Below are positions 4,016 to 45,626 of a stretch of DNA of 64,000 bases, in pieces. Position numbers and translations under genes: made by a program. Every line of letters begins with the position of its first letter. Within the stretch, counting starts at the first letter, position 1. Location of the stretch: positions 248,001-312,000 of the IMG/VR virus record IMGVR_UViG_3300044712_000810, one strand, 5' to 3'. Below the pieces are notes generated by a model. That model was given only the letters and a program-made list of their open reading frames with translations, was not told the origin of the DNA and searched no databases.

Positions 4016-4354
4016 ATGGATACACTATCTGCTTTTGCAATGGGTGCAGCTACTCGTGGAAAAGAAAAAAAAGTATTTGATTGGCATAAAGCCGCGAAAC
4101 TTATAAATGAACATAATGCAATGGATGCTGTTGCTGGTTTATCTTCTGATATGGAATATACAGCAGGCGAAATCTTAAAAGATGGTAAAATTGTAGATCG
4201 TGATGAAACATATACATATTTGGCATCAACATGGGCAACACCTGTGTTGGTACTCGATAATGATGAAATTCCATGTTATGTAATGGAAAGTGAAACTAAT
4301 TGGGATGCTGAAACTTATTGGCCTGAAAGTGCCATAAAAATGCTTGACAGATAA
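4016..4354 (+). CDS. Hypothetical phage protein
   Basis: 112-aa ORF with SD AGGAG, followed by a terminator hairpin. Confidence 0.65.
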   Translation: MDTLSAFAMGAATRGKEKKVFDWHKAAKLINEHNAMDAVAGLSSDMEYTAGEILKDGKIVDRDETYTYLASTWATPVLVLDNDEIPCYVMESETNWDAETYWPESAIKMLDR

Positions 4355-4358
4355 CAAA

Positions 4359-4390
4359 TGGGGCCGAAAGGCCCCAATTTTAATATTTTT
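4359..4390 (+). terminator. Intrinsic terminator closing the Ubl operon
   Basis: TGGGGCC-GAAA-GGCCCCA followed by a T-rich tract. Confidence 0.75.
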
Positions 4391-4396
4391 GTGTTT

Positions 4397-4407
4397 CATA
4401 TAGAAAT
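4397..4407 (+). promoter_or_regulatory. Recurrent promoter-like motif
   Basis: CATATAGAAAT in intergenic DNA after a terminator. Confidence 0.6.
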
Positions 4408-4447
4408 GGTAGGGTATATTTCTTATTAACGTTTTAAGGAGAATATT

Positions 4448-4726
4448 ATGAGTGACGACGGCGAAAAGAAAGAATTTTATGAGTCATCTGAACAAGAAAT
4501 CGAAGCAGTTGCAAATAAGATCGAGGATCTTTCATTAACATTAAAGAATCTTGCCGATAAAGGCGATCTTAATGCAAGATGTTTCCATGACATTCTTATT
4601 ATTGCATATCATTGCATACAACATGATAAACTTCTACAAGCACGTAATACTATTGTTGAATTTTATCAAAAAGAAATCGTTCATTCCGGTCAAGAAACTG
4701 AAGAAATGGACGTAGTCCTTAATTAG
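4448..4726 (+). CDS. Hypothetical protein
   Basis: 92-aa ORF with SD AAGGAG. Confidence 0.6.
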   Translation: MSDDGEKKEFYESSEQEIEAVANKIEDLSLTLKNLADKGDLNARCFHDILIIAYHCIQHDKLLQARNTIVEFYQKEIVHSGQETEEMDVVLN

Positions 4727-36996: not shown

Positions 36997-37071
36997 GCGG
37001 GTGTAACTCAGCGGTAGAGTTCAACATTGCCAATGTTGCTGTCGTGGGTTCGAATCCCATCACCCGCTCCA
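36997..37071 (+). tRNA. tRNA-Gly(GCC)
   Basis: CAACA-TT GCC AA-TGTTG. Confidence 0.9.
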
Positions 37072-37083
37072 TCTTTCTTAAAC

Positions 37084-37159
37084 GGGTCAGTAGTTCAATT
37101 GGTAGAGCAGCGGTCTCCAAAACCGTTAGTTGTGGGTTCGAGTCCTACCTGGCCCGCCA
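37084..37159 (+). tRNA. tRNA-Trp(CCA)
   Basis: CT CCA AA; G73. Confidence 0.9.
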
Positions 37160-37180
37160 CCTTTTAACCGGAGTAGTAAC

Positions 37181-37414
37181 ATGCCTGCATTAATTTGGTT
37201 GATTACAGGCGCAGCAACAGTCGTGTCAGCATTGAAGTATCTTGCCGACAAACAGGAAACCGACAACAAACAAACCGAACTTGGAAACAAGATTGTTGAA
37301 CAGAATTTGAAAATTCAACAACTTGAACAAAAGATCAAGTCCGATGCAGAAGTTCGCGCCAAGGCAGTTAAAATCATCGAAGAACACTACAAGCCTGAAG
37401 AGGACGATAAGTAA
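37181..37414 (+). CDS. Membrane-anchored coiled-coil protein
   Basis: N-terminal TM helix followed by a coiled coil. Confidence 0.55.
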   Translation: MPALIWLITGAATVVSALKYLADKQETDNKQTELGNKIVEQNLKIQQLEQKIKSDAEVRAKAVKIIEEHYKPEEDDK

Positions 37415-38136
37415 TGAAACGTTATCTTCTGCTCCTGTTTATGTGCATACTTCCTTTCATCACTGGTTGTGAACCTGGTGAAGGTGAAGTTAAGTACAAA
37501 AACAAATTCTTGCCATTACTATCTGCTCCTGAAGCAGCAATATATAAGAAAGTTCAAAAAGAATGGGATTATTCATATTTGATGCCAATCCGAAATGCGA
37601 TTTATCTTCGTCTTTCAGCGCCGGCTGATACTGATCTTCCATTCTATGATATTGCACCAACATTGGTGTTCATGAATGAGAAATATCTTAAAGAAAAAAA
37701 TAAAGATTTTAAATCCAAAAACATACTCTTTAGTGATATTAATGAATCATGGTGGGCGGCATTAGTTTCAAACGTTGAAAAAAGTGGCATCGATCTCAAT
37801 CAAATGATGGTTGATAAAGATAAACAGATTATCGTAACTATTTACGATGGTCGTCCACAAAAGAATCTGACTACTCCACAACCACCAAAGGTTGAAGTAA
37901 AGAAACCTGATATTAAAGAAACTAACATCGACAAAGTTGATGTTTCCGAATTACTTCCATATACTGAATATGAAATGCTTATGAAAGAAACCAAAACTTG
38001 CAGTTACGCGACTGAAATGCTTCTTAAGAAGCTTCGCGGTCAAAGATATCTATTCAAACAAGATAAAGATGAAATCATGCGTGAAGTTCTATTCTGTAAG
38101 AATATTGAACTTCAACAGCTGATTACAACTAAATAG
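37414..38136 (+). CDS. Lipoprotein
   Basis: MKRYLLLLFMCILPFITGC lipobox. Confidence 0.65.
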   Translation: MKRYLLLLFMCILPFITGCEPGEGEVKYKNKFLPLLSAPEAAIYKKVQKEWDYSYLMPIRNAIYLRLSAPADTDLPFYDIAPTLVFMNEKYLKEKNKDFKSKNILFSDINESWWAALVSNVEKSGIDLNQMMVDKDKQIIVTIYDGRPQKNLTTPQPPKVEVKKPDIKETNIDKVDVSELLPYTEYEMLMKETKTCSYATEMLLKKLRGQRYLFKQDKDEIMREVLFCKNIELQQLITTK

Positions 38137-38144
38137 TATAGCAT

Positions 38145-38220
38145 GTTGGCGGTAGCTCAGTGGTAGAGCGCCTGGTTGTGGCCCAGGTGGTCGCGGGTTC
38201 AAATCCCGTCCGTCACCCCA
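38145..38220 (+). tRNA. tRNA-His(GTG)
   Basis: G-1:C73; TT GTG GC. Confidence 0.88.
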
Positions 38221-38249
38221 TTTTTACACATACCAAAGGAGACTAAACG

Positions 38250-38765
38250 ATGGCACTAGAGATCGAACGCAAATTCATGGTGAAGCGAGTTCCAACAGAA
38301 CTCAAATGCATCAAAGAGGTGCATATTTGGCAAGGCTATCTTGCCAATGCTCCCGGAAAGACCGTTCGAGTTCGAGTCATCGACTCTACTCCCGGTCCTC
38401 GTATTGGCATGTTGACCATCAAGATCAATGTGTCAGATTTGTGCAGTAAACACAACTGCCGCGAGGAACTCGAATACGAGATTCCTTTGGAAGACGCATA
38501 TCTACTCCTCAAGAACTGCGGAGGCATCGCAATCGAAAAGATCAGAAAGGTCTATGTTTGCGAACATGGTTATCATTGGGAAATTGACAATTTCCTGGAT
38601 GAAAACAACAGAGGTCTCACAATGGCCGAAGTCGAAATGAAGTCTGAACAGGATTACATCCCGGACAACAAACTTCCTGAATGGCTTGGCTATGAAGTGA
38701 CCAATGATCCCAGATATCTCAATGAGAATTTGGCAAATCGCGGATTTAACACTTGGGGAATTTAA
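38250..38765 (+). CDS. CYTH-domain protein (triphosphate tunnel metalloenzyme)
   Basis: EIERKF, VRVR, IEKIR, WEID, AEVE, EVTNDPRY. Confidence 0.9.
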   Translation: MALEIERKFMVKRVPTELKCIKEVHIWQGYLANAPGKTVRVRVIDSTPGPRIGMLTIKINVSDLCSKHNCREELEYEIPLEDAYLLLKNCGGIAIEKIRKVYVCEHGYHWEIDNFLDENNRGLTMAEVEMKSEQDYIPDNKLPEWLGYEVTNDPRYLNENLANRGFNTWGI

Positions 38766-38771
38766 CAAAGT

Positions 38772-38849
38772 GGTCTGGTAGTTCAGTTGGTCTAGAACGC
38801 TACACTGTCACTGTAGAGGTCGAGGGTTCGAATCCCTTCCAGATCGCCA
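38772..38849 (+). tRNA. tRNA-Asp(GTC)
   Basis: CT GTC AC; G73. Confidence 0.9.
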
Positions 38850-38871
38850 TTAACTTTTACACGAGGTAAAC

Positions 38872-39462
38872 ATGTTCGACCCGGCAACTGCACTTTTTGC
38901 ATCAATCATGGCTCTTACAGGTTGGGGTTTCGTAACCGCAATCGGCACTTTCGTCATCGGATGTCTCGTCATGATCTTCATGCTCGAGGAGTCGATGTAC
39001 GGTAAAGGTTCCATCACGATCATCGTGTGGTACGCAATCATCGACTGGCTTCTCCAGTGGAAGATGTCACTCTTCATCTGGAACAATCCGATGAAGTTTG
39101 GCATTTACGTCGTTGCATTCTGCTGTATCGGCCTTGTCTGGTCGGTCATCAAGCTTATGTTCTACATGAGCAAAAGACGTTCGAAGTTCCAGGAATATAA
39201 AGATTCCTGGATGAAAGCGAATAAACCAAACATGTCAGACATTGATGCTGCATGGTTGGAACACTACAAAACAAATTATGTTCAAGGCATGATTCCTTCT
39301 TTCCCGAAGGCAAAGATCATGGCGTGGATGGCCTATTGGCCGTTCTCCATTTTGGAGTCATTCCTTAGTGACGTTGTGCGTAGTCTGTTCAACGCATTGT
39401 ACGATACATTCGGAAAAATCCACAGAAACATTTACGCGTACTATCGCAAGCAATTCAATTAA
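38872..39462 (+). CDS. Membrane protein
   Basis: Several TM helices at the N-terminus; AWMAYWPFS. Confidence 0.6.
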   Translation: MFDPATALFASIMALTGWGFVTAIGTFVIGCLVMIFMLEESMYGKGSITIIVWYAIIDWLLQWKMSLFIWNNPMKFGIYVVAFCCIGLVWSVIKLMFYMSKRRSKFQEYKDSWMKANKPNMSDIDAAWLEHYKTNYVQGMIPSFPKAKIMAWMAYWPFSILESFLSDVVRSLFNALYDTFGKIHRNIYAYYRKQFN

Positions 39463-39468
39463 CAACGT

Positions 39469-39544
39469 GGGAAGTTAGCTCAGTTGGTAGAGCGCAGTGC
39501 TGATAACGCTGAGGTCAGTGGTTCGATCCCACTACTTCCTACCA
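39469..39544 (+). tRNA. tRNA-Ile(GAT)
   Basis: CT GAT AA. Confidence 0.9.
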
Positions 39545-39568
39545 TTTTTACTAATACACGGAGAAAGC

Positions 39569-40084
39569 ATGAAACGCATCTTACCGTTGCTGTTACTTGC
39601 AGTGTTTCTCGCATCTTGCGGAGATAATAAACCTCCCAACCCTGTTCAGATTGAACAAACATCATCTGATAACGTCGTCACAAAAAAGATTGTGGTGAAC
39701 AAAAACTCACCACTATTCTACGACGTGAAACTCAGTGATGGAACAACTCGTCGGTTCGCAGCGACTTTCAAAGATGTCGAAAGACTCTCTGATGGTCGGT
39801 CAGTTCCGATTGATGTTGCATGGCAGGTTGAAGTGGCGGAAAAAGAGATCCTCAAAAACCAACTTGAGGAAAATCAACCATCAGAAGAACCTGCATACAA
39901 ATACAAGTCTCGTAATGTTGAACTGTACTATCAAGAAAAACTTGTAGCACAGTATACAACACATGCACCATTCTCAACGGATGGTTGGACGTATGTTGGT
40001 ATTGTTGGAAAAAACAATATCAATCATCACATTTACATCAACGGTGCATACCGAATGGTATTAACTTCTGATGAAAACGAATAA
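39569..40084 (+). CDS. Lipoprotein
   Basis: MKRILPLLLLAVFLASC lipobox. Confidence 0.65.
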   Translation: MKRILPLLLLAVFLASCGDNKPPNPVQIEQTSSDNVVTKKIVVNKNSPLFYDVKLSDGTTRRFAATFKDVERLSDGRSVPIDVAWQVEVAEKEILKNQLEENQPSEEPAYKYKSRNVELYYQEKLVAQYTTHAPFSTDGWTYVGIVGKNNINHHIYINGAYRMVLTSDENE

Positions 40085-40619
40085 ACTATATTCCGTGGCA
40101 TTGATCTGGTTTCTCTTCATGGGAGACTCGATTACCCTCGGTCTAAACAAAAAAGAAAATCGTGATCTATTGCCCCAAAACAGCGTCGTAAAGGCGATGA
40201 ATGGAGCGACCACGAATTTCATGTTGATGTACGACGAGTACATCTGGAAACCAAAACAACTCAAACGCGTGATTCTCATGTTCGGTGTGAACGAGATTTC
40301 TGCGACTTCATACAATGAGAACTTCCTTGTTAACTACGAGGCGGAACTCAAGTATATCCAGAAGTTTCGACCGGACGTTGAAGTTTACGTGATGAGCATA
40401 TTACCAGTGCGATCTAAGAAGATCAACAATATACTGGTAAGTGAAGCGAACCAACGGTTACAACAACTTGTTGAATCGCAACACAACTCCAAGATCAAAT
40501 TCATTAACTGTCATGACGCATTTGTGTCGCCTGATGGGAAGATGAATATGGCACTATCGACTGATGGTATACACCTAAATCGAAAAGGCTATGAGGTCTT
40601 GGCAACCTTTATACAATGA
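40071..40619 (+). CDS. SGNH/GDSL hydrolase
   Basis: GDSIT, FGVNE, DGIHLN..GY. Confidence 0.85.
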   Translation: MKTNKLYSVALIWFLFMGDSITLGLNKKENRDLLPQNSVVKAMNGATTNFMLMYDEYIWKPKQLKRVILMFGVNEISATSYNENFLVNYEAELKYIQKFRPDVEVYVMSILPVRSKKINNILVSEANQRLQQLVESQHNSKIKFINCHDAFVSPDGKMNMALSTDGIHLNRKGYEVLATFIQ

Positions 40620-40659
40620 ACATCCGGGAGGATGAAATACTCCTCCCGGTTTTCTAATT

Positions 40660-40745
40660 GCGATAGTGTCCCGAGCGGCAAAGGGGGAAGACTGTAAATC
40701 TTCTGTCATTCGACTTCGGTGGTTCGAGTCCATCCTATCGCACCA
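40660..40745 (+). tRNA. tRNA-Tyr(GTA)
   Basis: Class II; CT GTA AA. Confidence 0.9.
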
Positions 40746-40766
40746 TTTTTAACTTTTTATTATTGT

Positions 40767-40861
40767 GCTCCAGTAGCTCAATTGGCAGAGCATCCGGCTT
40801 ATACCCGGCTTAGCGGCTGATTACCGTAAGGTTGTGGGTTCGATTCCTACCTGGAGTACCA
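40767..40861 (+). tRNA. tRNA-Ile(TAT) with long variable arm
   Basis: CCGG-CT TAT AC-CCGG; V-arm CTTAGCGG/CCGTAAG; A73. Confidence 0.8.
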
Positions 40862-40888
40862 TTTTTTAACTTTTCTTTGGAGGCTTCT

Positions 40889-41071
40889 GTGAGTATCGAA
40901 ATTTGTATGAGTGTTAAGAAAGCAAAGAAAATTATCGATGCGATTGATAAATACGAAGAAACACTCCCAAAACTTGAAATTCAAGATGGTAATTTACAAT
41001 CAGATACTTATGGAATTTTATCTACATTAGATGAACTTCGTAATATGATAGTAGAGGAAATGGATGAGTGA
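40889..41071 (+). CDS. Hypothetical protein
   Basis: SD GGAGG before GTG. Confidence 0.45.
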   Translation: MSIEICMSVKKAKKIIDAIDKYEETLPKLEIQDGNLQSDTYGILSTLDELRNMIVEEMDE

Positions 41072-41246
41072 TATAACTGTTGGTTTATATAATGATGAAG
41101 TAGAAGATTTTATTGAAGCTATTGTTGATTTAAAACATTTAGCAGAACAAACATCTATTGAAACGATTAATGAAAAACAAAGATTACATAATATTATTAC
41201 ACGCATTGAAGTAGTTCAAGGACATATCCTTGATGAATATGTATAG
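41064..41246 (+). CDS. Hypothetical protein
   Basis: 60-aa ORF, coupled to the previous gene. Confidence 0.45.
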   Translation: MSDITVGLYNDEVEDFIEAIVDLKHLAEQTSIETINEKQRLHNIITRIEVVQGHILDEYV

Positions 41247-41415
41247 GAGAAATAAATATGGCCGATGATACTTTTGATTTTATAGTTAAAAAGATCGAAC
41301 AAGTAACCGATACTGTGTCCGAAGTGGCATCAGTTGAAAGTAAAATAACGGCTAAAAAGGAAGAGTTTAAGAAACTCATTGAAGAAGTTCTAACAGAGAA
41401 GGGAGTAATTTAGAA

Positions 41416-42036
41416 ATGCGTGATGATCTGACTGAAATCGTATTTATTGTTGATCGTTCCGGTTCAATGGGCATGATTCGTAATGACGTAATCGGTGGAT
41501 TCAACACATTTATCAAGGATCAAAAAGCTGTTCCTGGTAATGCAAATGTTAGTTTAATTCAATTCGATGATAAATACGAAGTCAATTATTTGACAAAAGA
41601 TATTAATCAGGTTGAAGATCTGAATGCTGCTACTTATCAGCCTCGTGGAATGACTGCTCTTAATGATGCAATCGGCAAGACTATCATCAGTGTTGGTGAT
41701 AAACTTGCAAAGATATCTGAGACTGATCGTCCTGGAAAGGTCGTATTTGTTATCATGACCGATGGACATGAAAATAACAGCAAAGAATATGTTGGTGCCG
41801 CAGGTACTGAACAGATTAAAAAGATGATCACACATCAAAAAGAAAAATATAATTGGGAATTCTTGTTCATCGGCGGAGATCTGGATGTACAGGCAATGGC
41901 CCAAACTTATAACTTTGATACAAACAAGGTCCTTTGTTTTGATAAATCAGCCAAAGGAACTGAAACCATGTACGCCACACTGTCTGCTTCAATCAGCAAC
42001 TATCGTGGTGGCGCAAAGCTTTCATTCGAAAAATAA
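41416..42036 (+). CDS. von Willebrand factor A domain protein
   Basis: MIDAS motif DRSGSM, TALNDAIG, VIMTDGHEN. Confidence 0.88.
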   Translation: MRDDLTEIVFIVDRSGSMGMIRNDVIGGFNTFIKDQKAVPGNANVSLIQFDDKYEVNYLTKDINQVEDLNAATYQPRGMTALNDAIGKTIISVGDKLAKISETDRPGKVVFVIMTDGHENNSKEYVGAAGTEQIKKMITHQKEKYNWEFLFIGGDLDVQAMAQTYNFDTNKVLCFDKSAKGTETMYATLSASISNYRGGAKLSFEK

Positions 42037-42154
42037 AGGAGACCACTATGTGGTAGGTGAAAACTAGTCCACCGTAGGGTAATTCTAGAAGTCCTCCTTA
42101 ATCTAATTGTTGGTTGGTGCAATGCCATCTTAACTTTTAGACAGGAGAACTACA

Positions 42155-42499
42155 ATGTTTGGTCTTTACGATCTTAAGAATCATCAAATTCGTTTGGCAA
42201 AGGCTATTAAAAATAGTAACAACAATAAAATTGGTTATTCTGAATTTCAATCAGAACTTGAAGGTTGTAGAAAAATCTACGGCGATAAAGCTTTAAAAAG
42301 AGCTTATTATGATGCCAGTTATGAATTCAGACATCATCATATCGCATATTGTGAACTTCGCGGCAAAACTCGTGAAATGATTGAAATTCCAGCAGATAAT
42401 CATTTACCAAACGAAGACTATATTAAGGAAATCAAAAAATTTTGGCAGGAGAAGATCGATGAAGCTTTACGTGCTCGTCAGGAAAGATCTAACTCCTAG
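42155..42499 (+). CDS. Hypothetical protein
   Basis: SD AGGAG; RHHHIAYCELRGK. Confidence 0.6.
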   Translation: MFGLYDLKNHQIRLAKAIKNSNNNKIGYSEFQSELEGCRKIYGDKALKRAYYDASYEFRHHHIAYCELRGKTREMIEIPADNHLPNEDYIKEIKKFWQEKIDEALRARQERSNS

Positions 42500-42746
42500 T
42501 CAACAAGCGGTGCAGGCAGGTCATGCAGTCGCTGAATATTTAATTAAAAATACAAACCAATGGACAAACGAAACACTCGTTTATCTTGGAGTTCAAAACT
42601 TAGAAGAATTGCATAAGTGGATGCAGAAACTAGATTCAAAAAACATTGAATACACACAATTCAATGAACCAGATTTAGAAAATCAAGCAACTGCAATCGC
42701 TATTTGCAATAACGATAAGGAATTCAAAAAACTAAAACTAATTTAA
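42459..42746 (+). CDS. Peptidyl-tRNA hydrolase Pth2-like protein (short phage type)
   Basis: LYVLVRKDL...QAVQAGHA...FNEPDLENQATAIA. Confidence 0.7.
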   Translation: MKLYVLVRKDLTPSQQAVQAGHAVAEYLIKNTNQWTNETLVYLGVQNLEELHKWMQKLDSKNIEYTQFNEPDLENQATAIAICNNDKEFKKLKLI

Positions 42747-42821
42747 CTCTGTATAGCTCAGTGGCAGAGCTGGGAACTCTAAATTCCCCGGTCGCGAGTT
42801 CGAGTCTCGCTACAGAGGCCA
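42747..42821 (+). tRNA. Amber suppressor tRNA (anticodon CTA)
   Basis: CTCTGTA/TACAGAG, G73, CCA; GGGAA-CT CTA AA-TTCCC; canonical D-loop GG and TTCG. Confidence 0.88.
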
Positions 42822-42825
42822 ATAT

Positions 42826-43090
42826 TAAGTACAACTCTCCGTAAACCGCTAACATTCAACATCATAGATATTTATTGAAGAATGAAAATATACTTTTATG
42901 AAAGTATATTATATTTCTATGATGATCACACGATGACAAAATTGAATGTATATGTTTACAAGAGGTCAGGGTAACGAGGCTTTGTTGACAGCCAAAGGCC
43001 ACGGCTCGAGAAGCTAAGTGTCGACAGTTTATATAACTTAGAATTATATTAAAATTTGTCGACGGTTGGTTCGAATCCAACGTGTACTTA
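42826..43090 (+). ncRNA. About 265-nt structured RNA with tRNA-like acceptor stem and T-arm
   Basis: TAAGTACA/TGTACTTA closes the element; GTTGG-TTCGAAT-CCAAC T-arm; 130-nt rod hairpin inside. Confidence 0.6.
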
Positions 43091-43095
43091 CAACA

Positions 43096-43140
43096 CGGGA
43101 TGGTGTAAAAACCATCCCGAATTTTTATTATTTCTCTTTT
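43096..43140 (+). terminator. Intrinsic terminator
   Basis: CGGGATGGT-GTAAAA-ACCATCCCG followed by a T tract. Confidence 0.75.
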
Positions 43141-43151
43141 CATATAGAAAT
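43141..43151 (+). promoter_or_regulatory. Recurrent promoter-like motif
   Basis: CATATAGAAAT. Confidence 0.6.
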
Positions 43152-43190
43152 AATACGAATACAAAACCTCATATGACGGAGGTATCAAAG

Positions 43191-43601
43191 ATGACAGAAT
43201 TTACTGTCAAGAAAAAAATGAACATTATGTTCGATTTACATGGGGTAATCGGTGAATATCCCGATCTTTTTAAACCTTTTATGAAATCCTTACGGATTCT
43301 TGATCATAAAGTATTTGTTTGTAGTGGTCCAACACTTCCAAAAATCAAACAAGAACTTGAAGATTTAGGATATCGCAGAGGATGGCATTACGATGAAGTT
43401 ATTTCCGTAGTCGACTATCTCGTTGCAAATGGCACAGAATTCGAATACGATGAAAAAGGCGATCCTTGGACTGACGATGAAACATGGTTTAAGTCTAAAG
43501 GCGAAATCGCTAAATTAAACAACATTCATATTATGATTGATGATTCTGAAAAGTACAAACAATTCGTGGACAAGGAAACATTATTTTTCCTAGTTAAATA
43601 A
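43191..43601 (+). CDS. HAD-superfamily-like protein
   Basis: MFDLHGVI, VCSG, MIDDS. Confidence 0.55.
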   Translation: MTEFTVKKKMNIMFDLHGVIGEYPDLFKPFMKSLRILDHKVFVCSGPTLPKIKQELEDLGYRRGWHYDEVISVVDYLVANGTEFEYDEKGDPWTDDETWFKSKGEIAKLNNIHIMIDDSEKYKQFVDKETLFFLVK

Positions 43602-43675
43602 CGTGTTATATATGCCAAGTTAGAGGTTTACATAATCTCTAATGAAACATATGTGACCAAACAAAGGAGTTTGAC

Positions 43676-45097
43676 ATGTTATGTCAAGACAACATTTTGG
43701 TTAATACTGATTCGTATAAATCTTCTCACTTCCTCCAATACCCTCCTGGTACTGAGGTGGTGAGCAGTTATATCGAGTCACGTAACGCTGGCAGATGGCC
43801 TCGCACCATCTTTTTCGGTCTTCAGATGTTCATCAAAGAATATCTGCTCAGACCATTTACTCTTGCGGATATTGAATTCGCCAAAGATTTCTGGGAAATG
43901 CATGGCGAACCTTTCAATTTCGATGGTGCAAAATACATCTATGATCAATATGGCGGATACCTTCCGGTCACCATTCAGGCGGTCAAGGAAGGAACAAATA
44001 TTGAAACCAGTAACGTCCTTGTGCAACTGAGAAACAATGGTGGTGAAAAAACCTCATGGATTACCAACTTCCTTGAAACTTCATTGCTTCGTGGTGTTTG
44101 GTATCCAACTTCAATTGCAACTCTCAGTTTCATGTGTAAGAAGATCATTTACAATGCTCTTCAACTCACAGCTGACAATCCTGATGCTGAAATTCTGTTT
44201 AAACTTCATGATTTCGGTTTCCGTGGAGTCTCTTCGTGGGAATCTGCCGCTATCGGCGGTTGTGCCCACTTGGTGAACTTCATGGGTTCTGATACAGTAG
44301 CAGGCGTTTTGGCAGCACGCAATTACTACAATGAAAAAATGGCTGGATTTAGCATTCCTGCATCTGAGCACAGCACGATTACATCGTGGGGTCCAGGTAT
44401 GGAAGCAGAAGCATTCTTGAACATGATCAATCGTTTCGGAGGCAAAGGCAAGCTTTACGCTTGTGTGTCCGATTCGTATGATATTTGGAATGCCGTCGAA
44501 AACATCTGGCCATCTCTGAAAGACGCAATCATCGAGAAGGGCGGAACTCTTGTAGTTCGTCCCGATAGTGGAAATCCTGTAGCAGTTGTTGCAGGTGTCA
44601 TTGAAAGACTTATGTCGAAGTTTGGATGGACTGAAAACTCGAAAGGTTATCGTGTCCTTCCTGAATACATTCGCGTTATTCAAGGCGATGGAATCGATGA
44701 AGAATCAATTCGTGATATCTTACAAGAATTGCAATTCAGAAAGATCAGTGCATCAAACGTTGCTTTTGGCATGGGTGGTGCGCTTCTTCAACATCTGAAT
44801 CGTGATACCCTTAGATTTGCAATGAAATGCAATAGCATTAAGCGCAACGGTTCTTGGCAGGACGTAAGCAAAAATCCAGTAACGGATTCCGGAAAGGTAT
44901 CTAAGGCAGGTCGTCTTGCCCTTATAAAAATCGATCCTGAAAAGGAAGGTCGCAGAGGCGAACCATACTTCAAGACCATCCGTGAGGATGAACTTGGAGA
45001 TCGTGAAAATTGTCTCGAGACAGTTTTTGAAAATGGTGAACTGATGCGTGAACAGTCATTCTCTGAAATTCGTGAACTCGCAGCATCGAGTTTGTAA
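43676..45097 (+). CDS. nadV: Nicotinamide phosphoribosyltransferase (Nampt)
   Basis: TDSYKSSH..QYP, KLHDFGFRG, PASEHS, VSDSYD, VRPDSG, QGDG. Confidence 0.95.
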   Translation: MLCQDNILVNTDSYKSSHFLQYPPGTEVVSSYIESRNAGRWPRTIFFGLQMFIKEYLLRPFTLADIEFAKDFWEMHGEPFNFDGAKYIYDQYGGYLPVTIQAVKEGTNIETSNVLVQLRNNGGEKTSWITNFLETSLLRGVWYPTSIATLSFMCKKIIYNALQLTADNPDAEILFKLHDFGFRGVSSWESAAIGGCAHLVNFMGSDTVAGVLAARNYYNEKMAGFSIPASEHSTITSWGPGMEAEAFLNMINRFGGKGKLYACVSDSYDIWNAVENIWPSLKDAIIEKGGTLVVRPDSGNPVAVVAGVIERLMSKFGWTENSKGYRVLPEYIRVIQGDGIDEESIRDILQELQFRKISASNVAFGMGGALLQHLNRDTLRFAMKCNSIKRNGSWQDVSKNPVTDSGKVSKAGRLALIKIDPEKEGRRGEPYFKTIREDELGDRENCLETVFENGELMREQSFSEIRELAASSL

Positions 45098-45098
45098 A

Positions 45099-45626
45099 AT
45101 GACAACTATACCAAGAGCTGGTGTATATATTGGACGTTTCTGTCCATTGCACCATGGACACATGAAAATAATCGATGAAATGATTAAACATCATGGAATT
45201 GATAAGTGTCTGATTCTTATCGGCAGTTGCAATGCCGACATATCATTCAGAGTATTATTCAAACATAGTGATAGACGTCGTTGGATAAAAAGAATATATC
45301 CAGATCTTAAACAATTAGGATTGCCCGATTATCCCAACGATGATACAGCATGGCTTACACAAGTAGAAGATATTGTATCTCTTGTATTTGGCAAAGAATG
45401 TGAACCTACGTTCTATGGCGGATGTCAAGAAGATATTGAAATCTTTTATGATGCAGGTCATCATGTAAAAATTATTGATAGAATGGAATATCCGGTAAGC
45501 GCAACAAATGTTAGACAATTACTATTAATGAATGAAGATATTAATACGTTAGTCGACACTCGTATTTCGAGTGAAGTTATCGATGTATTTCGAAAACGTA
45601 TGAAAGAACTTGACAAACTACGTTAA
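45099..45626 (+). CDS. NMN adenylyltransferase (Nmnat, NadM/NadR-type)
   Basis: YIGRFCPLHHGH (HxGH), LIGS, VSATNVR. Confidence 0.85.
   Translation: MTTIPRAGVYIGRFCPLHHGHMKIIDEMIKHHGIDKCLILIGSCNADISFRVLFKHSDRRRWIKRIYPDLKQLGLPDYPNDDTAWLTQVEDIVSLVFGKECEPTFYGGCQEDIEIFYDAGHHVKIIDRMEYPVSATNVRQLLLMNEDINTLVDTRISSEVIDVFRKRMKELDKLR

What the first reader, a model, noticed from the sequence alone, without database searches (positions are those of the whole stretch)
42826..43090. 265-nt RNA closed by a tRNA-like acceptor stem and perfect T-arm, directly after the suppressor tRNA
Seen: TAAGTACA (42826-33) pairs with TGTACTTA (43083-90), just 3' of a canonical T-arm GTTGG-TTCGAAT-CCAAC. Before the T-arm is a long stem GTCGACAG/TTGTCGAC ... 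ATATAA/TTATAT capped by an anticodon-like loop CT-TAG-AA. In place of a D-arm there is a 130-nt rod (CTCT/AGAG, GTAAAC/GTTTAC, ACATTCAA/TTGAATGT, CATCATAGA/TCTATGATG, AATATACTTT/AAAGTATATT) and another hairpin. A terminator follows. There is no G3:U70, no encoded CCA and no tag ORF, so it is not a standard tmRNA. Inference: a new tRNA-mimic ncRNA (processed by RNase P/Z, binding EF-Tu, ribosome or a synthetase), or a tRNA carrying a large insertion.
Basis: partly seen in the sequence, partly recalled or inferred. Interest (0 to 1): 0.78.

Follow-up and report, generated by a model that had tools for sequence, protein, structure and literature searches.

The report
Orphan tRNA-shaped RNA after suppressor tRNA
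A 315-kb phage carries, right behind its amber-suppressor tRNA gene, a 265-base element that folds like an oversized tRNA and is built on the same plan as phage T4's still unexplained "species 1" RNA, but only a fragment of one near-identical relative was found elsewhere, so its function cannot yet be tested by comparison.

Summary
42826-43090 (+) has an 8-bp closing helix, a textbook T-arm, a 13-bp hairpin with an anticodon-like loop CUUAGAA, and a 130-nt AT-rich rod where a D-arm would be. It starts 4 nt after the encoded CCA of tRNA(CUA) and ends 5 nt before a strong intrinsic terminator. It is non-coding. It is not a tmRNA, a YrlA/Y RNA, a T-box, a group I intron or a canonical tRNA, and it is not a copy of a host tRNA end.

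The closest known thing is T4 RNAC (species 1 RNA). RNAC has the same order of parts, no encoded CCA, the same position behind a tRNA near the distal end of the tRNA cluster, and no known function. A covariance model of the RNAC family matches only the T-arm, so this is an analogue, not a homologue.

No homologue was found in phage, IMG/VR, metagenome or bacterial collections. Only a 151-nt contig of a near-identical relative exists: its 3' domain is invariant and the 3' strand of its rod is hypervariable. Covariation and expression remain untested.

Best reading: a tRNA-derived RNA co-transcribed with the suppressor tRNA and probably processed by tRNA enzymes (confidence 0.45). Main rival: a decaying tRNA gene. 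Interest is moderate.

The parts
42459..42746 (+). PTH2-like (peptidyl-tRNA hydrolase 2 family) small ORF, first gene of the unit (context)
   Evidence: Pfam PF01981, 27.5 bits against a cut-off of 23. In related loci a tRNA(CUA) nearly always follows it.
42747..42821 (+). Amber-suppressor-type tRNA (anticodon CUA) with encoded CCA
   Evidence: ARAGORN; Rfam tRNA 63.3 bits; sequence.
42826..42833 (+). 5' strand of the acceptor-like closing helix (TAAGTACA)
   Evidence: Pairs perfectly with 43083-43090.
42835..42964 (+). 130-nt AT-rich rod (27% G+C) of nested perfect helices, in the place of a D-arm. Its closing pairs are CUCU/AGAG.
   Evidence: Folds; G+C. In the X2 relative, positions 42916-42949 carry the 6 listed substitutions and 4 deleted bases.
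42965..43019 (+). Central 55-nt region, weakly structured (about -11 kcal/mol, several alternatives), G+C-richer
   Evidence: Suboptimal folds. Identical in the X2 relative.
43020..43063 (+). Long hairpin (7 + 6 bp) capped by the 7-nt anticodon-like loop CUUAGAA (43037-43043)
   Evidence: It is the only hairpin in the element with a 7-nt loop that has U at position 2 and a purine at position 6.
43065..43081 (+). Canonical T-arm GTTGG-TTCGAAT-CCAAC
   Evidence: It is also the only part matched by the tRNA and rnaC models.
43083..43090 (+). 3' strand of the closing helix (TGTACTTA). It is followed by CAAC, so there is no CCA.
43096..43129 (+). Intrinsic terminator (stem 43096-43119, then AATTTTTATT)

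Best explanation
This is a tRNA-derived, tRNA-shaped non-coding RNA made as the last part of the transcript PTH2-like gene, tRNA(CUA), element, terminator. Its acceptor-like helix stacked on a canonical T-arm is the minimal shape that tRNA-processing enzymes recognise.

The likely path is as follows (inferred, not shown). RNase P cuts at or next to 42826. The 3' end is set by the terminator and trimmed back to the closing helix. The product is a stable RNA of about 265 nt that cannot be aminoacylated as encoded, because it lacks CCA.

It is an architectural analogue of T4 RNAC (species 1 RNA). The rod is a fast-evolving expansion segment. The conserved 3' domain (central region, UAG-loop hairpin, T-arm) would carry whatever trans activity exists, most plausibly the binding or titration of a protein that handles tRNA.
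For: - Exact tRNA-like closure plus a consensus T-arm. The fold is far more stable than shuffles (z = -4.69).
- Its spacing matches that of the phage's tandem tRNAs: 4 nt after the CCA of tRNA(CUA), against 5-15 nt between neighbouring tRNAs.
- A same-strand terminator lies 5 nt after it.
- It is non-coding. TAA or TGA stops occur in all three + frames. The only open frame, on the minus strand, is broken by a net 4-nt deletion in the relative and has no protein homologue.
- In the X2 relative, 42950-43049 is 100/100 identical, while the PTH2 gene piece of the same run shows 4 differences in 150 nt.
- T4 rnaC has the same order of parts: closing helix, long hairpin in the D-arm place, hairpin in the anticodon place, canonical T-arm, and no CCA. 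It follows tRNA-Arg and rnaD and precedes a terminator. Its fold is supported by 19 of 46 pairs with compensatory changes, and it accumulates in vivo (PMC9697503).
- RNase P is known to process non-tRNA substrates of this shape (PMC11143913).
- Other large phages carry oversized tRNA-like genes beside their tRNAs: L012, L021 and L032.
Against: - No homologue was found anywhere, so there is no covariation.
- The only RNA-library signal has the same depth as the neighbouring mRNA (11.8 against 11.4), and DNA in that library cannot be excluded.
- Helices are nearly all Watson-Crick and fold equally well on both strands. That fits recent or DNA-level origin as well as it fits an RNA.
- One rod helix (ACAUUCAA/UUGAAUGU) has its 3' strand rewritten in the relative, with the 5' strand unseen.
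- There is no CCA, although the 21 tRNAs whose 3' ends were inspected all encode it.
- No phage CCA-adding enzyme was found.
Confidence: 0.45

Rival explanations
1. It is a decaying tRNA gene: a former tRNA whose D-arm was replaced by a palindromic insertion and whose anticodon stem grew. It would be transcribed only as a 3' trailer and have no function of its own.
For: - No D-arm, no CCA, and an Rfam tRNA score of only 14.3 bits.
- Lineage-restricted, with no homologues.
- The rod is AT-rich (27% G+C) and partly hypervariable.
- Helices are almost all Watson-Crick and strand-symmetric.
- The anticodon-like UAG plus A at 43090 would fit a tRNA-Leu ancestor (inference).
Against: - A perfect 8-bp closure and a perfect consensus T-arm are retained.
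- 100 nt of the 3' domain are invariant in a relative whose adjacent coding DNA differs.
- It has no similarity to any of the 32 tRNAs of the phage beyond the T-loop.
- The rod has no other copy in the genome, so it is not a repeated mobile element.
Confidence: 0.25
2. It is purely a cis-acting punctuation or stability element, like a plant-mitochondrial t-element. The tRNA-like fold only directs RNase P or 3' exonuclease cuts and shields the 3' end of the tRNA(CUA) transcript, and the released RNA is discarded.
For: It sits between the tRNA and the terminator. RNase P cleaves tRNA-like non-tRNA substrates (PMC11143913).
Against: A 265-nt ornate structure is far more than is needed. Most related phages place an ORF or another tRNA directly after tRNA(CUA), with gaps of 0-60 nt and no such element.
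Confidence: 0.15
3. It is a partner or sensor of the suppressor tRNA. The loop CUUAGAA displays UAG, which can pair over 5 nt (UUAGA with UCUAA) with the anticodon loop of the co-transcribed tRNA(CUA). The effect would be either a kissing complex that titrates the tRNA or a T-box-like control of the terminator.
For: The loops are complementary (duplex -3.6 kcal/mol). A terminator and downstream genes follow.
Against: - The chance of the complementary triplet is 1 in 64 once both loops have U33 and A37.
- Among 96 suppressor tRNAs in related loci, no other has a UAG-loop hairpin within 400 nt downstream: 1 of 82 such hairpins, and that one is this element.
- There is no T-box match in Rfam, and by eye I saw no antiterminator alternative beyond 5 bp.
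- The phage uses the standard code.
Confidence: 0.05
4. It is a divergent tmRNA or another ribosome-rescue RNA working with the adjacent PTH2-like hydrolase.
For: - Acceptor and T-arm are present without a D-arm, as in the tRNA-like domain of tmRNA.
- A short frame GCC...UAA (AKGHGSRS*) lies in the central region.
- Related phages carry true tmRNAs in the same tRNA regions, and this genome has none.
Against: - Pair 3:70 is G-C, there is no CCA, and no enclosing P2 helix or pseudoknot is evident.
- ARAGORN tmRNA mode is negative even at an 80% threshold.
- Rfam tmRNA families do not match.
- The putative tag lacks a hydrophobic degron-like end.
Confidence: 0.03
5. It is a DNA-level feature, either an attP-type copy of a host tRNA 3' end or a palindromic origin or recombination site.
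For: Orphan T-arm plus acceptor 3' strand. Strand-symmetric perfect palindromes in AT-rich DNA.
Against: - No bacterial or archaeal representative genome holds the 25-mer covering the T-arm plus acceptor strand.
- The 8-bp complement 257 nt upstream is not needed for an att site.
- The record is a 315-kb phage with direct terminal repeats, and the element is oriented with the tRNA array and the terminator.
Confidence: 0.05

Closest known systems
Bacteriophage T4 RNAC (species 1 RNA, rnaC; 139 nt) and its relatives in Tevenvirinae
   Same: - The order of parts matches: acceptor-like closing helix, long hairpin where the D-arm would be, second hairpin where the anticodon arm would be, canonical T-arm (UUCGAAU loop), then the 3' strand of the closing helix.
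- No CCA is encoded.
- It lies at the distal end of a tRNA cluster, behind tRNA-Arg and rnaD, with a terminator downstream.
- Its function is unknown (PMC3014915, PMC9697503).
   Different: - There is no sequence homology. The rnaC covariance model scores 14.5 bits, on the T-arm only.
- The family's conserved motifs are absent: the tandem U-U mismatches in the closing helix, the loop GUAGCGUCAAC, and UUCGAGGA.
- This element is about twice as long, has an extra 55-nt central region, a perfect 8-bp closure and a 7-nt anticodon-like loop.
tmRNA (tRNA-like domain)
   Same: Acceptor helix plus T-arm without a true D-arm, and a large insert between the two acceptor strands.
   Different: No G3:U70, no CCA, no P2 helix or pseudoknots, no credible tag frame, and no model match.
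YrlA / bacterial Y RNA-like tRNA mimics
   Same: A phage-encoded tRNA mimic with a consensus T-arm. The same genome carries several YrlA-like modules and a Ro-like gene.
   Different: YrlA is circularly permuted (T-arm, then an acceptor closed by a loop, then a D-arm) and has a D-arm. This element has tRNA order and no D-arm. The YrlA model does not match it. The Ro-like gene is about 250 kb away.
Oversized or interrupted tRNA genes of large phages (for example L021 3750-3921, L012 5133-5262, L032 2532-2677, L040 4217-4329)
   Same: Consensus T-arm and 7-bp closure spanning 110-170 nt, beside ordinary tRNAs.
   Different: Several of them keep a recognisable D-arm and an encoded CCA (L021, L040). 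None shares sequence with this element.
tRNA-like processing signals (plant mitochondrial t-elements, the mascRNA type)
   Same: A tRNA-like fold in a longer transcript that recruits RNase P or RNase Z to define RNA ends.
   Different: Those are eukaryotic or organellar and close to tRNA size. Processing here is only inferred.

Membership tests
Canonical tRNA | Cloverleaf with a D-arm (G18G19 loop) and a score above the Rfam or ARAGORN thresholds | tested here: not met
   There is no D-arm: a 130-nt rod takes its place. Rfam tRNA scores 14.3 bits against a cut-off of 29. ARAGORN is negative, including in intron mode.
Canonical tRNA | T-arm with a T-loop consensus, stacked on a 7-bp acceptor helix | tested here: met
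   GTTGG-TTCGAAT-CCAAC, then 8 perfect pairs with one G between them.
Canonical tRNA | 3' CCA, encoded in this phage's tRNA genes | tested here: not met
   TGTACTTA is followed by CAAC. All 21 annotated tRNAs whose T-arm matched the motif end in CCA.
tmRNA | G3:U70 alanine identity pair and a CCA end | tested here: not met
   Position 3:70 is G-C in the 7-bp register, or A-U in the 8-bp register, and there is no CCA.
tmRNA | Match to tmRNA covariance models or to the ARAGORN tmRNA search | tested here: not met
   The same tools find tmRNAs in L007 and L020.
tmRNA | Tag reading frame with a resume codon and a degron-like end | tested here: inconclusive
   Only AKGHGSRS* is available in the central region. 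It has no hydrophobic C-terminus, and no homologues exist to test conservation.
YrlA / Y RNA | Permuted order (T-arm, loop-closed acceptor, D-arm) inside a Ro-binding stem, and a match to the YrlA model | tested here: not met
   The order here is tRNA-like, and RF02553 gives no hit on the element. True YrlA-like modules lie elsewhere in the genome.
T4 RNAC (species 1 RNA) family | Architecture: closing helix, long hairpin, second hairpin, T-arm, no CCA, behind a tRNA at the distal end of the cluster | tested here: met
   Compare.
T4 RNAC (species 1 RNA) family | Sequence and profile homology, and the family's invariant motifs (tandem U-U mismatches in the closing helix, GUAGCGUCAAC loop) | tested here: not met
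   Model R1, built from 5 family members, scores 14.5 bits on the T-arm only. The motifs are absent.
T4 RNAC (species 1 RNA) family | Accumulates as a discrete stable RNA after RNase P processing | not testable with these tools
   Only 151-nt Logan contigs from one RNA library cover part of the element, at the same depth as the neighbouring gene.
T-box riboswitch | Stem I specifier, conserved T-box sequence and an antiterminator alternative | tested here: not met
   No Rfam T-box match at E up to 10. By eye, only a 5-bp alternative (CGUGU/ACACG) overlaps the terminator side.
Group I intron in a tRNA gene | Match to the intron model, with exons that rebuild a tRNA | tested here: not met
   No Rfam intron match. 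ARAGORN intron mode is negative.
attP copy of a host tRNA 3' end | Identity to the 3' part of a bacterial tRNA gene | tested here: not met
   The 25-mer GGTTGGTTCGAATCCAACGTGTACT is absent from 185,579 representative genomes.

The most novel reading that the evidence does not exclude
tRNA-rich phages from unrelated lineages may repeatedly evolve a "terminal tRNA-like RNA" at the end of a tRNA transcription unit. T4 RNAC would be the first example and this element a second, independent one. These RNAs would be matured by tRNA enzymes and act in trans as tRNA mimics, for example as decoys for host tRNA-targeting defence nucleases, or as modulators of a co-transcribed tRNA. In this case the displayed UAG triplet would pair with the suppressor's anticodon.
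Probability: 0.15. Interest if true: 0.7.

Novelty: new variant of a known kind. Interest (0 to 1): 0.42.

Why it matters
T4 RNAC and RNAD have been known for about fifty years and still have no function (PMC3014915, PMC9697503). An independent, unrelated RNA with the same plan, in the same kind of place, in a distant 315-kb phage suggests that the plan is selected. The plan is a tRNA acceptor/T-arm handle carrying non-tRNA hairpins, made at the end of a tRNA unit. That gives a second system in which to ask what such RNAs do.

The same genome also encodes a Ro-like protein, several YrlA-like mimics and an RtcB ligase, so tRNA mimicry and RNA repair look like a theme of this phage.

If the element is instead a decaying tRNA gene, it is a minor curiosity.

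Tried and rejected
**Homologue searches, all empty**
- blastn against 50,697 phage records.
- blastn and nhmmer against 48 IMG/VR loci and 80 metagenome loci that share the neighbouring PTH2-like gene.
- BLAST against the 48 whole IMG/VR records.
- Full-length covariance model R2 against the 48 whole records and the 80 metagenome loci. As a control, R2 scores 325 bits on the element itself, and it finds no paralogue in the genome.
- Three exact patterns in IMG/VR and one in bacterial genomes.
- Protein search with the spurious minus-strand ORF as a proxy for homologous DNA.
- Synteny through the downstream 136-aa ORF of unknown family (no Pfam match): the best relative is 60% identical and sits in a different context.
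- Synteny through the PTH2-like protein: the best relative is 64% identical.

**Identities rejected**
- tmRNA, YrlA, T-box, group I intron, 6S, SRP and RNase P RNA.
- A coding region, including one read with TAG as sense. The genome uses the standard code.
- A recent duplicate of one of the phage's 32 tRNAs.
- A repeated mobile element.
- A conserved theme of a UAG-loop hairpin behind suppressor tRNAs.

**Not attempted**
- I did not type a hand-made dot-bracket structure for a model that includes the T-arm. R2 therefore uses the free fold, which lacks the T-arm pairs.

Full report
**Setting.** The window is bases 248001-312000 of a 314,837-bp IMG/VR virus record with direct terminal repeats, so this is a large phage. 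ARAGORN finds 27 tRNA genes in the window and 32 in the genome, covering all 20 amino acids, plus a tRNA with anticodon CUA at 42747-42821. All 21 annotated tRNAs whose T-arm matched a simple motif are followed by an encoded CCA. ORF statistics show that the phage uses the standard code. Reading TAG as sense raises ORF coverage only from 0.854 to 0.868, and TAG ends 17% of long ORFs.

**Gene order around the finding (all on the + strand).**
- a vWA-domain protein, 41416-42036
- a small ORF
- a PTH2-family peptidyl-tRNA-hydrolase-like ORF, 42459-42746
- tRNA(CUA)
- the element, followed by its terminator
- a 136-aa ORF with no Pfam match, 43191-43601
- nicotinamide phosphoribosyltransferase
- a cytidylyltransferase-like protein (probable NMN adenylyltransferase)
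- an AAA ATPase

**The observation.** They are the 8-bp closure 42826-33/43083-90, the T-arm GTTGG-TTCGAAT-CCAAC at 43065-81, the 7 + 6-bp hairpin 43020-63 with loop CUUAGAA, and the nested helices of the rod at 42835-42964.
- The unconstrained fold (-70.7 kcal/mol, z = -4.69, 0 of 200 shuffles as stable) keeps the closure, the rod and the long hairpin. It pairs the 5' strand of the T-stem elsewhere.
- Enforcing the T-arm costs 2.4 kcal/mol, so the cloverleaf-like form is fully competitive.
- The element begins 4 nt after the CCA of tRNA(CUA), within or just below the spacing seen between the phage's tandem tRNAs (5-15 nt).
- It ends 5 nt before a 9-bp, 6-G-C terminator with a T-rich tail.
- It is non-coding. 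All three + frames have TAA or TGA stops. The one open frame, on the minus strand, has no homologue among 5.8 billion proteins and is frame-shifted in a near relative.
- A consensus GGTTCGAATCC with a closed 5-bp stem is not a chance event in 315 kb, and an adjacent perfect 8-bp closure adds about a hundred-fold (my estimate).

**What it is not.**
- ARAGORN's tmRNA search is negative even at an 80% threshold.
- Rfam finds nothing at gathering score in the window except tRNAs. At E up to 10, only noise falls on the element, with tRNA at 14.3 bits.
- Dedicated genome-wide searches with the tmRNA and YrlA models do not hit it. The same tools recover true tmRNAs in two related phage contigs.
- The third acceptor pair is G-C and CCA is missing, so the two hallmarks of a tmRNA tRNA-like domain fail.
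- It shares nothing with the phage's 32 tRNAs beyond the T-loop, and it has no second copy or repeated sub-element in the genome.
- The 25-mer covering the T-arm and the 3' acceptor strand is absent from 185,579 representative bacterial and archaeal genomes, which argues against an attP-type copy of a host tRNA end.

**Relatives.** I could find no independent homologue.
- DNA, profile and covariance-model searches were all empty. They covered the phage collection, 48 whole IMG/VR records, 80 metagenome loci that share the neighbouring PTH2-like gene, and exact-pattern scans.
- The flanking proteins show how isolated this phage is. The best PTH2-like relative is 64% identical and the best relative of the downstream 136-aa ORF is 60% identical.
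- The only comparative datum is a 151-nt Logan contig from a wastewater "RNA-Seq" library, laid on 42896-43049. Positions 42950-43049 are identical: the end of the rod, the whole central region and most of the long hairpin. Positions 42916-42949 carry the 6 listed substitutions and 4 deleted bases.
- The changes rewrite the 3' strand of the helix ACAUUCAA/UUGAAUGU. The matching 5' strand was not recovered, so this is neither covariation nor disproof.
- A contig of the PTH2 gene from the same run has 4 differences in 150 nt, so the invariance of the 3' domain is only weak evidence of constraint.
- Depth is the same on the gene and on the element (11.4 and 11.8), and the tool warns that DNA may be present. 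Expression is therefore not shown.

**Closest known thing.**
- The T4 record annotates two "small, stable RNAs" behind tRNA-Arg: rnaD, then rnaC (species 1 RNA, 139 nt).
- rnaC folds with z = -4.6. Its parts, in order, are a closing helix of the two ends, a 60-nt hairpin in the D-arm place, a 10-bp hairpin in the anticodon place, and a canonical T-arm CCGGG-UUCGAAU-CCCGG next to the 3' strand. There is no CCA, and a terminator lies downstream.
- Five diverged family members from Tevenvirinae align well. The consensus fold has 19 of 46 pairs with compensatory changes, including pairs in the closing helix and the T-stem.
- The order of parts and the genomic position are those of the present element. 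That element is about twice as long because of its rod and an extra 55-nt central region.
- It is not a family member. A covariance model of the rnaC family gives no hit in the window with default filters, and 14.5 bits on the T-arm alone with filters off. The family's invariant motifs are absent.
- Reviews and a recent omics study state that the roles of RNAC and RNAD are unknown. The omics study classifies both as late RNAs, with Northern-blot validation (an RNAC riboprobe is described) (PMC3014915, PMC9697503).
- Related large phages also carry oversized tRNA-like genes beside ordinary tRNAs. L021 is 172 nt, with a D-arm and CCA. L012 is 130 nt, L032 is 146 nt, and L040 is a tRNA with a 36-nt insert in the anticodon loop. 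Expanding the tRNA scaffold is evidently common in this kind of phage.

**Mechanism.**
- *Shown:* the sequence, its fold potential, its position in a tRNA-terminator unit, its non-coding nature, and the exclusions listed above.
- *Inferred:* the element is transcribed with tRNA(CUA). RNase P, which needs little more than an acceptor/T-arm stack and is known to cut tmRNA, 4.5S RNA and phage RNAs (PMC11143913), releases its 5' end at or next to 42826. The 3' end is trimmed from the terminator back to the closing helix. The product persists as a stable tRNA-shaped RNA that is not aminoacylated.
- *Speculative:* the conserved 3' domain binds a tRNA-handling factor. I put 0.45 on the expressed, processed ncRNA reading.
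- *Main rival (0.25):* a degenerate tRNA gene. In its favour are the missing D-arm and CCA, the lineage restriction, the AT-rich and partly hypervariable rod, and helices that are almost purely Watson-Crick (5 G-U in 91 pairs) and equally stable on the other strand.

**The suppressor-pairing idea.** The loop displays UAG, which can pair with the suppressor's anticodon loop over 5 nt. I tested this and find it weak. Among 96 suppressor tRNAs in 128 related loci, no other has such a hairpin within 400 nt downstream. The coincidence is 1 in 64.

**Verdict.** The element is a real, well-formed tRNA mimic. It is best filed as a new, unrelated variant of the T4 RNAC kind, not a wholly new class. Its function is unknown, and neither conservation nor expression could be established with the data available. 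Interest is moderate: it gives a second handle on an old unsolved RNA, but it rests on a single genome.

Noticed in passing
window 42459-42821; loci L002-L049 and L088-L167: A small PTH2-family ORF is followed directly by a tRNA with anticodon CUA in most related phage loci: 96 such tRNAs in 128 loci, often within 0-60 nt. This phage nevertheless uses the standard genetic code. The pairing looks like a conserved two-gene module of unknown purpose. PTH2-like homologues also occur in Lak megaphages.
   Followed up: partly
own genome outside the window: G000:C1 about 37,000-43,700 (loci L050, L053, L168): A Ro60/Rsr-like ORF (TROVE match 20.6 bits, in a 540-aa frame) is followed by three permuted tRNA mimics of the YrlA type (T-arm, loop-closed acceptor, D-arm) at about 39175, 39664 and 40720. 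The best Rfam YrlA score is 36.2 bits. tRNAs Met, Asp and Tyr and an RtcB RNA ligase (187 bits) come next. The layout resembles the Salmonella rsr-yrlBA-rtcBA operon. ARAGORN misses the mimics.
   Followed up: partly
own genome outside the window: G000:C1 163,800-164,100 (L051 1000-1290): Two more permuted tRNA-like modules lie in tandem. Each has a consensus T-arm, then an acceptor helix closed by a loop that contains CCA, then a D-arm. The Rfam YrlA score is 27.7 bits.
   Followed up: no
L024 3928-4180, L035 4241-4435, L026 2075-2272, L022 4543-4744, L025 4736-4921: A different, unannotated structured element, rich in G+C hairpins, lies within about 40 nt after tRNA(CUA) in three of these phages (L024, L026, L035) and 0.8-1.1 kb downstream in two (L022, L025). 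Shared motifs include GGATTTTCTAG and TATGATACCC. nhmmer E-values run from 1e-22 to 4e-6. There is no Rfam match in L024, the only one of the five that was scanned.
   Followed up: partly
L005 about 4240-4590 (same contig as L107): An exceptionally stable non-coding stretch of about 330 nt lies after the suppressor tRNA and a terminator. It has a 13-bp closing helix (GAGAAAAACAGAG/CUCUGUUUUUCUC), the whole gap folds at -0.31 kcal/mol per nt, and there is no Rfam match.
   Followed up: no
L021 3750-3921, L012 5133-5262, L032 2532-2677, L040 4217-4329, L008 4207-4621, L089 1192-1595: These are oversized or interrupted tRNA-like genes that ARAGORN misses. L021 is a 172-nt form with D-arm and CCA. 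L040 is a tRNA with a 36-nt hairpin in its anticodon loop. In L008 the insert appears to encode an HNH-type motif (CPNCH). L089 is a 404-nt CCA-ended closure that may be a tmRNA-like gene.
   Followed up: partly
L007 222-599 and L020 1356-1752: True tmRNA genes (88 and 74 bits) lie in the tRNA regions of related phages. The phage studied here has none.
   Followed up: yes
window 43676-45626: Nicotinamide phosphoribosyltransferase (PF04095 and PF18127) and an overlapping cytidylyltransferase-like ORF (probable NMN adenylyltransferase) form an NAD+ salvage pair directly downstream of the element's terminator.
   Followed up: partly
window 40767-40861: tRNA-Ile(UAU) is 95 nt long and has an unusually long variable arm for an isoleucine tRNA.
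   Followed up: no
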